The notes under the pieces: model-generated
What the model was told of the DNA's origin: nothing
What the model saw: only the letters and a program-made list of their open reading frames with translations
Databases searched by the model: none
Shown here: piece by piece, positions 41,621 to 49,039 of the stretch
How positions within the stretch are numbered: position 1 is the first letter of the stretch
Layout: each line of letters opens with the position of its first letter
NCBI GenBank assembly: GCA_965644265.1
Contig: OZ286472.1
Coordinates: forward strand, 16,120,001-16,184,000
From: Glycera tridactyla
Lineage: Eukaryota
Direction: 5' to 3'
DNA: 64,000 nucleotides
Made by a program: the position numbers and the translations under genes

Positions 41621-42514
41621 CTACAAATTAACCGATTTCGGACGGATATATGACCTGAAAGCTGACGACGACCAACGCCCCATTATACGTATTTGTTCTT
41701 CAGATCGGCCTTCCGCCGCCCAATCTGAACACCGACCTATTCTAAAGGAGTGAGATGACAAAGCATGTCCTTGACCTAAAATAAGGTCACCTATGTGTTT
41801 CAACCATTTGTTTACAAAACCACTGTTCACTGGCTTACCATTACGAATAAACAAAGGACCATTAGAGTGTCCTCGACAGGCTAAATACGATTGCATAAGT
41901 TTTACAGGGCAAAATCGTCCAGCTGGAACACGATTTATAACAAAGGTTCGTTCACCCGAGGAAAACTTATATGACCGAAACGTGATCTTAAAGCCTGACA
42001 AGTTACCTTTGTCAAAAACCTCTTCGAGGTCTTCCATGCGGAGAGAGTGGTTGCTCGTTCCAGTGTGAGCGTATTCAGAGATTCTTAAACAAGCTGTGTA
42101 CGCCCATACGAACATGGTTGACAATAGTAAGCAATCATATGAATCACCCATAAAGTGATATATTCCTGATACCAATTTCTCTAAAATCTGTATGTTTATG
42201 CCTATCCTTTGGTCAGAAGATTGATCACATTTTGAAATAGCGATAGTCATACGATTAATGACATAATGTTTGCACCAATCAGGAAAGTTAGCCGATTTGA
42301 GGCCATGTGAAATAGCCGACAAGTGAGATTTTATAGAAGATGATTTCAAACCTTTCCTAAACAACCAGGCTACGTACATGGCTACCACTTCAAACCCTAA
42401 GGGTTGAGAAAATTCTTGTACAAAATTACAAAAATCTAGCCACACCTTATTATAACTGGTAATCGTTCCTTCAGCGAAAGAATCTTCTACCAACTTTTTC
42501 ACCATGGATTGCAA
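41621..42514 (-). CDS. Tyrosine recombinase (phage-integrase family) of a DIRS/Ngaro-type retrotransposon, 297 aa, intact
   Basis: N-terminal SAM-like region (T..SY.K.W..F..F) plus catalytic motifs ACLRISEY (R), RSYKFS (K), SHSFRIG (HxxR), MGRWSSSAFRSY (W, Y). Overlaps the RNase H ORF end by 16 nt. Confidence 0.95.
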   Translation of the reverse strand: MQSMVKKLVEDSFAEGTITSYNKVWLDFCNFVQEFSQPLGFEVVAMYVAWLFRKGLKSSSIKSHLSAISHGLKSANFPDWCKHYVINRMTIAISKCDQSSDQRIGINIQILEKLVSGIYHFMGDSYDCLLLSTMFVWAYTACLRISEYAHTGTSNHSLRMEDLEEVFDKGNLSGFKITFRSYKFSSGERTFVINRVPAGRFCPVKLMQSYLACRGHSNGPLFIRNGKPVNSGFVNKWLKHIGDLILGQGHALSSHSFRIGRCSDWAAEGRSEEQIRIMGRWSSSAFRSYIRPKSVNL

Positions 42515-44226
42515 GTCATAGGATTGTATGACTCGTGAACAGTTATCGGATGGATAGCCAGGCCTGCTTGTCGTAAATCTTCCTGCGAAAAATTTGACCG
42601 AGATATTTTATCCGGTAAATGGTTATCCACACCAGGAACGTGGATAGCATGAAAATCCACATCATTAAACAATGAAAACAGCATAATACGTCTCATGACT
42701 TTCATAAGTTGCTTATCTTTCGCTGATCTCTTATTTAGAATTTCTACGACAGCCATATTGTCACAGTGCATTATGACACGTTTGTGTCTAAGAGCCAAAC
42801 GAAAAGTGACTAAGGCTACTAAGAAAGGGTAGAATTCTAACATAGCTATATTGAATTCTTGCCACGTAGGGGGAAACTGTAAGTGGAACCATAAGTTACG
42901 AAATATGACTGCTGCTCCTAGTTTGGAGGCATCTGAATAAATATGTTCAGGTTCATGACGTCTTAAAGTTATATGTTGCAAAAATGAATATCCATCATAT
43001 GAATCCAAAAATGTTTTCCACATTTTCAGATCATCACCGAGTTCCTCCGTGAATGGGATAATGTGAGCAGGATTGGAGAATCCTTTTGATGCATCAATTA
43101 AACCACGTAAAAATGATTTCCCAGCTGGAATCAAGGAAGCACACCAATTAAGCTTCCCTACAAGGGAGCGAATGGCTCCGAAGGTACAAGTACGAGATGC
43201 TATGATGTCATCAATTATCTTGGCATATTTTGATAATTTGTCTTGAGGAATGCTAGCAAAACCCCTTTTTACGTCAATCTCAATACCTAAGAAGGATAAG
43301 GTTTGAGTAGGTAGCTCAGTTTTCTTGGGACAGAGAGGTATGCCTACTTCCTGACAAAAGTTCTGAAAGATGACCAGTTGTCGTAAACATTCATCCTCAC
43401 AACTGGCAACTATACAGTAGTCGTCAATCATATGAGACATGCAATCAATACCCAATTTGTTATTGCATATCCATTGCACTGCACAAGAAAATCGTTCAAA
43501 AATCCTGCAAGAGGATCGGGCTCCCATGGCCAGACAGCGATTGATGTAAAAATCAGAACCCAATTTCAAACCCATCAGATGGAAATCATGAGGGGATATC
43601 GGGACAATACGAAAGGCAGATTTGATATCTGATTTGCACAAAAATGCTGTCTTCCCTATATCTACTACAAAATCGATAACTGACTGTACGGACGTATATT
43701 GGACGGAAGCCTCCGAATCCGGTATATTGTGATTTATGGATGAACAGTTATACGGTGCTGAGAGATTGTGTATAAGACGAAAAGAACCGATTTCCTGTTT
43801 AGGTACTACAGAAATAGGAGAAACCTGGAGATTGTTGTATGGAGGTATCCTAAACGGACCTGCTAAACGACCTAATTCTACATCTTTAAATACTAATTCT
43901 TTTGCTGCTTCGTAATGTTCACTTATAGATGCAGAATTCCTGCTATGGTAAGCTGGAGAGGTTCCAACAAACCCAATTCTAAACCCAAAACGAAAACCAC
44001 TAACCATGTAATTCCTTTCCTCTGTATGATATCCCTCCAAATATTGATCAAGTTTGAGCGGGATTACTGGTGTCACTATTTGGTCCAGGTTTCCGCTTGT
44101 TAAATGACTGTGTTCCCGAAAAAGAGGAAGAGTTCCTGCGGGCATAAGCAGGGTGATTGCCTGTACAGGACGCACATATGTGTTTAAATATACAATTAGG
44201 GAAGAGACACCTCTTCCCATGCGCAT
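42499..44226 (-). CDS. Reverse transcriptase-RNase H of a DIRS/Ngaro-type retrotransposon, 575 aa, intact; no methyltransferase domain seen
   Basis: RT motifs SPISVVPK..GSFRLIHNLS, KSDIKSAFRIVP, LAMGARSSCRIFE, HMIDDY, FLGIEID. RNase H motifs YSDAS, MLEFYP, HCDNMAVV, DNHLPDKISR. ATG at 44226 overlaps the last 179 nt of gag in another frame. Confidence 0.95.
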   Translation of the reverse strand: MRMGRGVSSLIVYLNTYVRPVQAITLLMPAGTLPLFREHSHLTSGNLDQIVTPVIPLKLDQYLEGYHTEERNYMVSGFRFGFRIGFVGTSPAYHSRNSASISEHYEAAKELVFKDVELGRLAGPFRIPPYNNLQVSPISVVPKQEIGSFRLIHNLSAPYNCSSINHNIPDSEASVQYTSVQSVIDFVVDIGKTAFLCKSDIKSAFRIVPISPHDFHLMGLKLGSDFYINRCLAMGARSSCRIFERFSCAVQWICNNKLGIDCMSHMIDDYCIVASCEDECLRQLVIFQNFCQEVGIPLCPKKTELPTQTLSFLGIEIDVKRGFASIPQDKLSKYAKIIDDIIASRTCTFGAIRSLVGKLNWCASLIPAGKSFLRGLIDASKGFSNPAHIIPFTEELGDDLKMWKTFLDSYDGYSFLQHITLRRHEPEHIYSDASKLGAAVIFRNLWFHLQFPPTWQEFNIAMLEFYPFLVALVTFRLALRHKRVIMHCDNMAVVEILNKRSAKDKQLMKVMRRIMLFSLFNDVDFHAIHVPGVDNHLPDKISRSNFSQEDLRQAGLAIHPITVHESYNPMTCNPW

Positions 44227-46890: not shown

Positions 46891-46924
46891 TGAGTCACCG
46901 GTATTTATAACCTCGCGCATGCGC
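46891..46924 (-). promoter_or_regulatory. Candidate Pol II promoter for the SGNH gene
   Basis: On the minus strand: GCGCATGCGC (NRF1-type palindrome, 46915-46924), TATAAATA (46902-46909), then TGACTCA (AP-1-type, 46891-46897), about 60-90 nt upstream of the ATG. Motif match only. Confidence 0.45.
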
Positions 46925-49039
46925 AGAGAGGATGTACCAAAAAACAACCTAGAACCAAAAATAGTTTTTTGAAAAACAAACCAAATATATATCACGAACA
47001 TGTAGTAATATAATGAAACAATACAATATATTTTGTAAAAATTACCTGGGAGTTAACTCTCGTTTGGATGTGAGAATTAATTGAGTAATAAGCGACACCT
47101 ATGAGTAACGGTGAGTAAAAAGCAGCACGACACTTGTACATTTTCTCAAAAAGGCATTTCATTGAAATGTGATTTCTGAAGGCTTCATTATAATCCTTGA
47201 CAGAAATAACTAGGCATGGAGGCCTGAGATGGTAAGTGGAAATTGGGTGAACATATGGGTGGTGTAGCTGGATGGGTGGGTGAGTGTGTTTGTGGATGGG
47301 TAGTGGTGGGTATGTAGGTGCATGGNNNNNNNNNNNNNNNNNNNNNNNNNNNNNNNNNNNNNNNNNNNNNNNNNNNNNNNNNNNNNNNNNNNNNNNNNNN
47401 NNNNNNNNNNNNNNNNNNNNNNNNNNNNNNNNNNNNNNNNNNNNNNNNNNNNNNNNNNNNNNCCCTCCTTCTCTCTCCCTCTCCCTCCCTCACTCCCCCT
47501 CTCTCTCTCCCTCCCTCCATCTCACCCCCTCTCCTCCCTTCTTTCACTCTCCCTTTCCCTCCCCATCCCATCTCCTCCCTTTTCTCTCTCTTTATCGCTC
47601 TCCTCCCTCCCTTCTTCTCTCTCTGCTCCCTCTATGTCTCCCTCCCCTCTCTCCCTGTCTCTCTCCTCACNNNNNNNNNNNNNNNNNNNNNNNNNNNNNN
47701 NNNNNNNNNNNNNNNNNNNNNNNNNNNNNNNNNNNNNNNNNNNNNNNNNNNNNNNNNNNNNNNNNNNNNNNNNNNNNNNNNNNNNNNNNNNNNNNNNNNC
47801 CCTCCCTTCATCTCTCCCCATCTCCTCCCTCTTCTCTCTCTTTATTGCCTTCCTTCCNNNNNNNNNNNNNNNNNNNNNNNNNNNNNNNNNNNNNNNNNNN
47901 NNNNNNNNNNNNNNNNNNNNNNNNNNNNNNNNNNNNNNNNNNNNNNNNNNNNNNNNNNNNNNNNNNNNNNNNNNNNNNNNNNNNNNNNNNNNNNNNNNNN
48001 NNNNNNNNNNNNNNNNNNNNNNGAGCAAGAATTTGAGAATAAGAATAAAAACAAGAATAAGGAATCTTTATTGCACACTTGGTCCATTACAGCTGGACAT
48101 CAGTCGTACAACGCAATAAGCCTAATGTATGCCTTTTATGGGTTGCAGTTAATACAATAGATTATATGGCATACTGTACCATTCCAGGAATTACCAGAAC
48201 ATCTGATTTTTGGTACATATGACTCAACGTTACTGTCCTCATGTGTATTGATTGCCTTCACTGCATATATGGTCCAAACATCTTATTAATAGAGCTATAC
48301 ATGGACCATATCAAGGGGGTCTCATTAACTTTGCTCACAGAAGTTGATCAGTAATATCTAAATGTCCTGTGAATTTGTACCTACTCATCTCTCCTTCAGA
48401 TCCTGGATCCTCTTTCTTTCTCCCTACACAGATTTTTGCTTTTCGCATGAGTTGAGCATGCATATGGAATTGGTAGTTTGGCCGTTGCGATATGCAGCAA
48501 AGGTCTCAAGACACCTAGAAGTACACTTTCATCTTGATAGAAGGATTGATACAAGAACTCACAGTGTAATTCGAAGTGTGCGTCTTTCAGAAACCATCCA
48601 GCTTCTGTTTTGACTTGTTGGGTACTGTGAAGTAGTGTGGTCACATGATCCCGTAGTTGGGGAGGAATCATGTGACAGGAGGAGCTCCCAATATATCAAT
48701 TTCATCACTTGTAATTCTAAATGTGCATAGTTCAGATTTCTCATCTGTCTTTTGTCAGCAAAATCTGGCATGCAAAGGACCTTGACTTGAACATAATATG
48801 GGCAATTAATGGCTCAATGTCGTCTCAGCAATTTCCCTCTCAACTTAAGTGGGCCCAGTATATCTATTTTATGGACATATTAAATTTCATAATTAATCTT
48901 AAATACAGAGGCCCAGATTATTTGGCTGATTTATTGATATTGTGGAATGGCATTCATAAGGATCACTTCCCTTCGGGAGGTAATAGTAGTGTGTGTGTTA
49001 TAATGGATTGCTTTAACCAGCTGGATCTCTTCTATGACT

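What the first reader, a model, noticed from the sequence alone, without database searches (positions are those of the whole stretch)
41621..47050. Ngaro-like YR retrotransposon with an intact SGNH hydrolase gene placed 5' of gag
Seen: SGNH (46833-46081), gag, RT-RH and YR lie on one strand, with only ~130 nt between the SGNH stop and the gag ATG. The hydrolase keeps Ser (GHS), Asn (GTND) and Asp/His (DGIH) and is uninterrupted, whereas gag is broken; block II reads NFRSCPFF with no obvious Gly. Known: SGNH esterases occur in ORF1 of some CR1/L2/RTEX LINEs and, as I recall, as an extra ORF downstream of the YR in some Ngaro elements. Inference: the order SGNH-gag-RT-YR would be a different architecture. 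It is not simply the tail of an identical upstream copy, because no SGNH follows the YR here. The enzyme might act on lipids or membranes of the element's particles, or be a captured cargo gene.
Basis: partly seen in the sequence, partly recalled or inferred. Interest (0 to 1): 0.85.

Follow-up and report, generated by a model that had tools for sequence, protein, structure and literature searches.

The report
Ngaro retrotransposon with leading esterase gene
This is a damaged copy of a young, multi-copy tyrosine-recombinase (Ngaro-type) jumping gene. Its lipase-like esterase gene sits in front of the capsid gene instead of behind the recombinase, probably inside an intron that is spliced out to make capsid protein. 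It is a real but modest variant of a known kind of mobile DNA.

Summary
On the minus strand lie A1 repeat (47178-46857), SGNH ORF (46833-46081), gag (45949-44048, broken by two frameshifting indels), RT/RNase H, tyrosine recombinase and B1 repeat (41598-40790).

At least 20 other copies in this genome carry SGNH in the same place, directly after A1. These include subfamilies only 66-73% identical. Complete copies end B1-A2-B2, the split direct repeats of Ngaro.

SGNH is open in 20 of 22 copies. Its dN/dS is 0.07-0.12, as low as for RT and YR. It keeps Ser, Asn, Asp and His but lacks the block II Gly, and it folds as an SGNH hydrolase closest to PAF acetylhydrolase Ib.

Relatives from other samples share the SGNH-first order. 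A frog relative has the published order YR then SGNH.

The ORF is framed by a conserved splice donor and by an acceptor that abuts the gag ATG. One contig from a public run shows exactly this junction for a sister subfamily, and that junction is absent from the genome DNA.

This scan had already noted the same family on other DNA of this genome. Verdict: a new variant of a known kind; the enzyme's function is untested.

The parts
46857..47178 (-). A1 split direct repeat (322 bp). Holds a GCGCATGCGC motif (about 46927-46918) and a TATAAATA box (46909-46902).
   Evidence: Similarity to 20 other copies begins at 47173-47179. The same 322 bp recurs as A2 after B1 in complete copies. The motifs were read.
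45950..46854 (-). Putative 905-nt leader intron. Donor is GCGAAG|GTGATA (46855|46854). A CTGAC branch-like motif and a pyrimidine tract follow. Acceptor is ttcttttctag|ATG (45950|45949).
   Evidence: The donor is kept in 18 of 18 tabulated copies and the acceptor in 17 of 18. Donor-like and acceptor signals flank the SGNH ORF in the relatives L061, L063 and L066. A contig of run X1 joins the leader end directly to AG-ATG of gag. The joined form was not found in the genome.
46081..46833 (-). SGNH/GDSL hydrolase ORF, 250 aa. Key residues are Ser29 (GHS), Asn114 (GTND) and Asp207/His210 (DGIH). There is no block II Gly.
   Evidence: Pfam PF13472. Open in 20 of 22 copies. dN/dS is 0.07-0.12. The AF2 model has pLDDT 90.8. 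Foldseek puts PAF-AH Ib first.
44048..45949 (-). gag-like ORF1 (644 aa in copies where it is open), here in pieces. It carries a C-terminal Cys/His motif.
   Evidence: ORF list. Compared with its closest relative it has a 41-nt deletion near 45585 and an 8-nt insertion near 45138. It is homologous to the ORF that follows SGNH in L061. No Pfam family matches.
42499..44226 (-). RT/RNase H ORF, 575 aa and open. It has no methyltransferase domain and overlaps the end of gag by 179 nt in another frame.
   Evidence: Pfam RVT_1 at 1e-10 and RVT_3 at 0.008. 99 homologues, E down to 1e-165.
41621..42514 (-). Tyrosine recombinase ORF, 294-297 aa and open. R, HxxR, W and Y motifs can be read in the translation.
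   Evidence: Pfam Phage_integrase and SAM-like hits, both weak. 32% identical to the YRs of L067 and L069, E 1e-36 to 1e-49.
40790..41598 (-). B1 split direct repeat (809 bp), ending in the proper 3' terminus ...TTTTGACAAAAA. AATAAA lies at 41432-41427. This copy has no A2-linker-B2 after it.
40970..41040 (-). Conserved stem-loop inside B. A 14-nt inverted repeat (GTGCCTCGAGGCAC type) encloses 43 nt. It is the best-conserved non-coding piece across subfamilies.
   Evidence: Alignment of 8 subfamily copies. All 144 cells pair, and 2 pairs show compensatory changes.

Best explanation
The window holds one defective copy of a young Ngaro-type tyrosine-recombinase retrotransposon family. In this copy gag is frameshifted twice and the 3' A2-B2 block is missing. 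The family's canonical structure is A1 - SGNH esterase - gag - RT/RNase H - YR - B1 - A2 - 44-nt linker - B2. The esterase is an integral, selected gene of the element (shown).

Compared with published Ngaro elements (gag-RT/RH-YR-SGNH between the repeats), the gene order on a circle is the same. What has moved is the B/A repeat block: it lies between YR and SGNH instead of between SGNH and gag (inferred).

The SGNH ORF lies inside a 905-nt GT-AG intron of the 5' leader, and the acceptor abuts the gag ATG. Unspliced RNA therefore presents SGNH as its first ORF and must also be the RNA that is copied, because all copies keep SGNH. Spliced RNA presents gag, followed by RT/RH and YR. The splice signals are shown and one junction contig was seen. 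The division of labour between the two RNAs is inferred.

The protein has no signal peptide. It is most likely a cytosolic small-acyl or lipid esterase, like PAF-AH Ib and the LINE ORF1p esterase, that helps a membrane-associated step of particle or RNP assembly or transport (inference only).
For: Copy number and fixed position of SGNH.

Boundaries and split direct repeats. A1/A2 and B1/B2 are 98.8-100% identical within copies, while copies differ from each other by 4-15%.

ORF integrity: SGNH is open in 20 of 22 copies, and 7 of 21 stitched copies have all four ORFs open.

Selection: dN/dS is 0.067 across 20 copies. Among the seven all-open copies it is SGNH 0.12, gag 0.16, RT 0.10 and YR 0.09.

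Fold: AF2 pLDDT 90.8. Foldseek puts PAF-AH Ib alpha first at 4e-7, then sialate O-acetylesterases. The profile also hits the ZfL2-1 ORF1p esterase 4c1b at 0.0015.

Same layout elsewhere: L061, L063, L064, L066, L067, L069, L070 and L071. A frog relative shows RT-YR-SGNH.

Splice signals are conserved. The X1 contig shows the junction GCGAAG|ATG, with the leader of the C4/C32 subfamily. The unspliced form occurs at exactly those two copies, and the joined form was not found in the genome.

X1 contigs cover only 45781-45951 of the 1679 nt laid, and none of SGNH or A1.

DIRS-1 proteins can act in trans (PMC7192593).
Against: The RNA evidence is one 151-nt contig of depth 2, from a run whose RNA nature is only a guess. 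It belongs to a sister subfamily, not to the window copy.

That contig carries 108 nt upstream of the donor. This is more than expected if transcription starts about 30 nt after the TATA box, which lies 57 nt upstream of the donor.

A second junction inside gag (45782|45502) would truncate gag. Some splicing of these RNAs may therefore be cryptic.

In the remotest relatives (L067, L069, L070) I saw no clear acceptor at gag.

The block II Gly of the oxyanion hole is replaced, so catalysis is not assured. No substrate is known for any retroelement esterase.

I could not consult Repbase or Dfam, which may already list this order.
Confidence: 0.7

Rival explanations
1. The layout is real but there is no functional intron. 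SGNH and gag are both translated from one unspliced RNA (by reinitiation, leaky scanning or shunting), and the GT...AG signals are incidental or only cryptically used.
For: There is only one junction contig, in a run of uncertain kind. A clearly non-productive second junction exists in gag. The leader/post-stop helix that could serve shunting is strong in L061 (z -6.7), marginal in L063 (p 0.03), and not significant in this family, L064 or L066.
Against: The donor lies within 10-45 nt upstream of the SGNH ATG, and a pyrimidine-tract AG sits exactly at the gag ATG. This recurs in lineages whose spacers no longer align: the main family, C4/C32, C11, L061, L063 and L066. The observed junction uses exactly these sites. 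X1 contigs skip the SGNH region.
Confidence: 0.2
2. SGNH is kept as a non-catalytic lipid- or membrane-binding module, like other catalytically silent SGNH-fold domains, rather than as an esterase.
For: The block II Gly is replaced (FRSCPF) in this clade and its closest relatives, whereas remoter relatives keep Gly. In the LINE esterase, liposome binding did not need the active site (PMC3905857).
Against: Ser29, Asn114, Asp207 and His210 are invariant across subfamilies and nearly so among 40 relatives. This is the expected pattern if catalysis is retained. The oxyanion hole uses a backbone NH, which a non-Gly residue can supply.
Confidence: 0.2
3. This is a canonical Ngaro (gag-RT-YR-SGNH) with mis-set boundaries, and the SGNH here is the tail of an adjacent upstream copy.
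For: Tandem (B-A)n arrays do occur in this family: the chromosome C18 copy has a third A-B unit. On a circular intermediate the two orders are the same.
Against: Similarity between copies stops at 47178 and 40789, and the flanks are unrelated. A1 directly precedes SGNH, and B1 begins at the YR stop. Single copies such as this one carry SGNH at the 5' end and none at the 3' end.
Confidence: 0.02
4. SGNH is a host gene, or a recently captured cargo gene, that merely lies beside the element.
For: None beyond the general tendency of retroelements to capture ORFs (PMC5408684).
Against: It is multi-copy, always in the same place, co-diverges with RT and YR across subfamilies, and has the same dN/dS as the other element genes. 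It is present in the same position in relatives from other assemblies.
Confidence: 0.03

Closest known systems
Ngaro elements of amphibians with a fourth SGNH-hydrolase ORF (e.g. Repbase DIRS-53_XT; Goodwin and Poulter 2004, as cited in PMC9210276)
   Same: Both have gag-like ORF1, RT/RNase H without a methyltransferase, a tyrosine recombinase, split direct repeats A1...B1-A2-B2, and an SGNH ORF with a GHS block I. hhalign gives the frog SGNH against this family's profile at 94% probability, E 9e-8.
   Different: There the hydrolase follows the YR and overlaps it, as seen here in a frog relative. Here it is the first ORF, directly after A1, separated from gag by 131 nt and framed by splice signals. 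The repeats are larger (A 322, B 809 bp, against 236 and 152 bp), and a unique 44-nt linker lies between A2 and B2. The YR is only 23% identical to the frog YR.
Esterase domain of CR1/L2/RTEX LINE ORF1p (ZfL2-1, PDB 4C1B; PMC3905857)
   Same: Both are SGNH-fold retroelement esterases placed upstream of the polymerase gene, with cytosolic PAF-AH Ib as a close structural relative. The profile hits 4c1b at E 0.0015.
   Different: In LINEs the esterase is a domain fused to a coiled coil within ORF1p and keeps the block II Gly. Here it is a free-standing 250-aa protein beside a separate gag and lacks that Gly.
GDSL esterase ORF3 of bdelloid Vesta LTR retrotransposons and Athena/Penelope-like elements (PMC5408684)
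   Same: Both are stand-alone accessory esterase ORFs in a retroelement, thought to be auxiliary rather than env-like.
   Different: There the ORF lies downstream of pol, in LTR or Penelope-like elements. Relatedness to the ORF here was not tested.
Retroviral splicing logic (unspliced RNA as genome and gag-pol mRNA, spliced RNA for env)
   Same: A 5' leader donor decides which ORF is first on the mRNA, and only unspliced RNA carries the whole element.
   Different: The roles are reversed. Here the accessory gene would be read from the unspliced RNA and gag from the spliced RNA. This is inferred, not shown.

Membership tests
Ngaro (tyrosine-recombinase retrotransposons, order DIRS) | Encodes a tyrosine recombinase instead of an integrase | tested here: met
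   YR ORF 42514-41621. Pfam Phage_integrase and SAM-like hits are weak. R, HxxR, W and Y can be read in the translation. It is 32% identical to the YRs of related elements.
Ngaro (tyrosine-recombinase retrotransposons, order DIRS) | Split direct repeats A1 ... B1-A2-B2, with A1=A2 and B1=B2 | tested here: met
   Met in sister copies, with 98.8-100% identity within a copy. The window copy itself has only A1 and B1. A 44-nt linker between A2 and B2 is an extra.
Ngaro (tyrosine-recombinase retrotransposons, order DIRS) | RT/RNase H without the methyltransferase domain of DIRS/PAT, with ORF order gag, RT/RH, YR | tested here: met
   The 575-aa ORF has only RVT_1 and an RNase H-like hit.
Ngaro (tyrosine-recombinase retrotransposons, order DIRS) | RT/RH groups with named Ngaro references in a phylogeny | not tested
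   No named reference sequences (DrNgaro1, DIRS-53_XT) were available. The only anchor is a frog element with the published RT-YR-SGNH order among the RT homologues.
Ngaro (tyrosine-recombinase retrotransposons, order DIRS) | Hydrolase ORF, where present, lies after the YR (as described) | tested here: not met
   SGNH lies between A1 and gag in all copies. This is the variant feature, not a defining one.
SGNH/GDSL hydrolase | Block I nucleophile Ser (GxS) | tested here: met
   G27-H28-S29. Ser is invariant in the family and present in 35 of 40 relatives.
SGNH/GDSL hydrolase | Block II Gly (oxyanion hole) | tested here: not met
   FRSCPF at 77-82. Remoter relatives have G..G there.
SGNH/GDSL hydrolase | Block III Asn (GxND) and block V Asp-x-x-His | tested here: met
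   G112-T-N114-D and D207-G-I-H210 are invariant.
SGNH/GDSL hydrolase | SGNH flavodoxin-like fold | tested here: met
   AF2 pLDDT 90.8. Foldseek gives 72 PDB matches at E<=0.001; the 50 listed are almost all SGNH/GDSL-type hydrolases, plus a few designed scaffolds.
SGNH/GDSL hydrolase | Esterase activity | not testable with these tools
   Needs an enzyme assay.
Spliceosomal intron | GT-AG ends, pyrimidine tract, branch-like motif | tested here: met
   AAG|GTGATA ... CTGAC ... ttcttttctag|ATG.
Spliceosomal intron | Exon-exon junction seen in RNA | tested here: inconclusive
   One contig (151 nt, depth 2) of run X1 carries the exact junction for the C4/C32 subfamily, but the run is RNA only by a guess. 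The joined form was not found in genome DNA. A single 24-nt hit with 2 mismatches was not confirmed by longer patterns.

The most novel reading that the evidence does not exclude
A widespread Ngaro lineage keeps its accessory esterase gene inside a 5'-leader intron. Splice choice then switches the element's RNA between an esterase mRNA that is also the genomic template (unspliced) and a gag-RT-YR mRNA (spliced). This is retroviral logic in reverse. It implies that packaging or reverse transcription selects the intron-containing RNA and that the element's proteins act in trans.
Probability: 0.5. Interest if true: 0.65.

Novelty: new variant of a known kind. Interest (0 to 1): 0.5.

Why it matters
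What esterases do in retroelements (LINE ORF1p, Penelope-like elements, rotifer LTR elements, Ngaro) is an open question. Here the esterase is a free-standing protein under selection as strong as that on RT and YR, in a young family with many copies, and apparently with its own expression switch. That makes it a convenient handle: the enzyme can be assayed alone, and splicing can be followed with simple RT-PCR. The layout also shows that the repeat and integration block of YR retrotransposons can sit at different points of the same circular gene order. This bears on how their boundaries are annotated in repeat libraries.

Tried and rejected
- The word-indexed protein search with SGNH found nothing. 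The exhaustive profile search found 127 relatives.
- AF2 on a 6-sequence alignment failed (pLDDT 39). It succeeded with 40 sequences.
- A 24-nt joined-junction pattern hit C4:125436232 with 2 mismatches. Patterns of 38 and 56 nt did not confirm it, so I do not count it as a processed, intron-less copy.
In this family it is only a 6-8 bp CCCATT/AATGGG match, not above shuffles, and it is absent in L064 and L066. I rate it inconclusive.
- The idea that the A2-linker-B2 junction is itself a splice product is rejected. A2 leaves A two bases before the GT, and no AG precedes B.
- The frog copy shows no split repeats, so its boundaries could not be compared.
- Rfam found nothing in the window.
- Goodwin and Poulter 2004 and Poulter and Butler 2015 are not held.
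Copies were read by stitching overlapping loci.
- No joined (spliced) sequence was translated or searched as a whole. Only short junction patterns and frame arithmetic were used.

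
Full report
**Observation.**
The ORF list shows, on the minus strand:
- an SGNH ORF (46833-46081; a longer reading from 47001 is open only in this copy);
- three gag pieces (45949-44048);
- an open 575-aa RT/RNase H ORF (44226-42499);
- an open 294-297-aa tyrosine recombinase ORF (42514-41621).

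Pfam supports SGNH (PF13472, 5e-8, above its cut-off), RVT_1 (1e-10), and weak Phage_integrase and SAM-like domains. gag has no Pfam family. Compared with its closest relative, gag is broken by a 41-nt deletion near 45585 and an 8-nt insertion near 45138.

**Boundaries and family.**
Searching the window's own genome found at least 20 full matches to the SGNH stretch. Each lies about 2.8 kb upstream of a match to RT-YR on the same strand. They include subfamilies only 66-73% identical in DNA.

BLAST of the window against 58 of these loci shows that similarity begins at 47173-47179 and ends at 40789-40791. Beyond those points the flanks are unrelated.

In complete copies, B1 (= 41598-40790, 809 bp) is followed by a second copy of 47178-46857 (A2, 322 bp), a unique 44-nt linker, and a second B (B2). 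This is the split-direct-repeat structure that defines Ngaro and PAT-like elements (PMC9210276).

Within a copy, A1/A2 and B1/B2 are 98.8-100% identical, while copies differ from one another by 4-15%. The insertions are therefore young and come from several diverged lineages.

The ends read AAATCACATTTCAA... and ...TTTTGACAAAAA, and the B|A junction shares AAA.

The window copy is A1-internal-B1 with a proper B terminus but no A2-B2. Several other copies have the same form. Recombination between B1 and B2 would produce it. I also saw a solo A-linker-B unit and a (B-A) tandem.

**SGNH is a gene of the element.**
The 250-aa ORF is open, full length and without frameshift in 20 of 22 copies. Start and stop are conserved, and in-frame stops lie upstream in most copies.

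Nei-Gojobori dN/dS has a median of 0.067 over pairs of 20 copies. Among the seven stitched copies in which all four ORFs are open, the values are SGNH 0.12, gag 0.16, RT/RH 0.10 and YR 0.09. The esterase is thus as constrained as the replication genes.

No fetched copy lacks SGNH precisely. The deletions seen are irregular.

**The protein.**
G27-H28-S29, G112-x-N114-D and D207-G-I-H210 are invariant across subfamilies and nearly so among 40 relatives.

With a 40-sequence alignment AlphaFold gives pLDDT 90.8. Foldseek ranks brain PAF acetylhydrolase Ib alpha first (4e-7), then bacterial GDSL proteins and sialate O-acetylesterases. A profile search of PDB sequences also finds the ZfL2-1 LINE ORF1p esterase 4c1b (0.0015).

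The N-terminus shows no signal peptide by eye.

**Layout elsewhere.**
The profile search found 127 relatives. The closest lie on short contigs from metagenome-labelled assemblies, each followed by a second ORF. In L061 that ORF is homologous to this family's gag (1e-20).

Longer contigs show SGNH ... gag-RT-YR (L067; L070) or a broken SGNH upstream of RT (L069, L071). One RT relative had no SGNH within 6 kb (L072).

A frog (Leptodactylus) relative has RT-YR-SGNH with overlapping ORFs. That is the order published for amphibian Ngaro (see also PMC7192593).

The frog SGNH is remotely but detectably related (hhalign 94%, 9e-8). Its YR is 23% identical to this one, against 32% for the SGNH-first relatives.

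So SGNH-first is old and widespread, not a local accident. On a circle the gene order is the same in both types, and what differs is where the B/A block sits (inference).

**Leader intron.**
Three bases after the end of A1 lies GCGAAG|GTGATA, 21 nt before the SGNH ATG. The gag ATG is directly preceded by ttcttttctag, with a CTGAC motif about 35 nt upstream.

The donor is kept in 18 of 18 tabulated copies and the acceptor in 17 of 18. This includes subfamilies whose spacers no longer align. Donor-like and acceptor signals occupy the same places in L061, L063 and L066.

The only run offered, X1 (kind 'RNA?', Logan contigs), gave five contigs. All lie within 45781-45951, and none lies on SGNH or A1.

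One contig (151 nt, depth 2) continues upstream of 45951 with the end of the A leader of the C4/C32 subfamily. It thus joins ...GATCTGCGAAG to ATGTCT, exactly donor to acceptor.

The unspliced version of that leader occurs in the genome only at those two copies. The joined version was not found.

Another contig is identical to the window copy over 87 nt, so the run comes from this species.

I take this as first, thin evidence that the intron is removed. The caveats are:
- there is only one contig;
- the kind of run is uncertain;
- the contig holds 108 nt of leader, although the TATA box lies only 57 nt before the donor.

If the intron is real, spliced RNA encodes gag first and unspliced RNA encodes SGNH first. 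Because every copy retains the intron, the unspliced RNA must be the template that is copied. This requires the proteins to act in trans, as shown for DIRS-1.

**What the enzyme does.**
Nothing here tests it. By analogy with PAF-AH Ib and with the LINE esterase, which binds acidic phospholipids and liposomes (PMC3905857), the likeliest role is a membrane- or lipid-linked step of particle or RNP assembly or transport. A non-catalytic binding role is a live rival because of the missing block II Gly.

**Comparison and novelty.**
All defining Ngaro features that I could test are met. Placement in a tree with named references was not possible.

The accessible literature describes the hydrolase only after the YR. 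I found no paper on natural splicing in YR retrotransposons. I could not consult Repbase or Dfam.

Earlier notes of this scan on other copies in this genome reached the same reading of the layout and proposed the intron, but had no RNA. I treated them as leads, re-derived the layout independently and added the junction contig.

My verdict is a real, family-wide new variant of a known kind.

Noticed in passing
window 45502-45782 (minus strand): An X1 contig identical to the window copy joins 45782|45502 (CAG|GTGGGT ... ctactttacctag|G). It skips 279 nt inside gag here, or 320 nt in copies with open gag. The joined form is absent from the genome. The phases do not match, so reading stops after 29-54 codons. 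It may be a cryptic or down-regulating splice. The 168-nt exon between this junction and the leader intron is the only part of 45500-47178 that the run covers.
   Followed up: partly
window 40970-41040 (minus strand), inside B1: This is the most conserved non-coding block of the element across subfamilies that otherwise align only in coding DNA. A 14-nt inverted repeat encloses 43 nt with an inner 4-bp hairpin. All pairs are kept in 8 sequences, and two show compensatory changes. It is a candidate cis site for packaging, priming or the recombinase.
   Followed up: partly
complete sister copies, e.g. L024:1746-1789: A unique 44-nt linker (TCCCACCTCC...CTATGA) lies between A2 and B2. It is absent after A1 and before B1, and it is also present in a solo A-linker-B unit (L029). 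Its origin is unknown, and classical Ngaro diagrams show A2 abutting B2.
   Followed up: partly
window 46918-46927 and 46902-46909 (minus strand): A GCGCATGCGC palindrome (NRF-1-like motif, from my own knowledge) lies just upstream of a TATAAATA box near the end of A1. Both are kept in the diverged subfamilies. This is probably the promoter.
   Followed up: no
X1 contig record 2, at window 45949: A second contig carries a different 23-nt sequence (CCGGAAACTTGTGGGACCACACT) directly before the gag ATG. It is not found in any fetched locus. It may be another leader or subfamily.
   Followed up: partly
window 41170-41300 (minus strand), inside B1: A cluster of CCTAAG/CTTAGG palindromic motifs lies downstream of the AATAAA. 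Another note of this scan calls it a multi-hairpin domain. I did not fold it.
   Followed up: no
window 47200-48100: (CT)n-rich simple sequence with several masked N runs lies directly upstream of the element's 5' end. A similar CT-rich stretch lies at 40180-40310. Both are flanking DNA, not part of the element.
   Followed up: no
L002/L050/L055 (C17:44.39-44.41 Mb) and L009/L037/L028/L027 (C18:75.37 Mb): One sister copy carries an insertion of about 8.7 kb inside RT. Another ends in a tandem A-B-A-B array with a third A and B unit.
   Followed up: no
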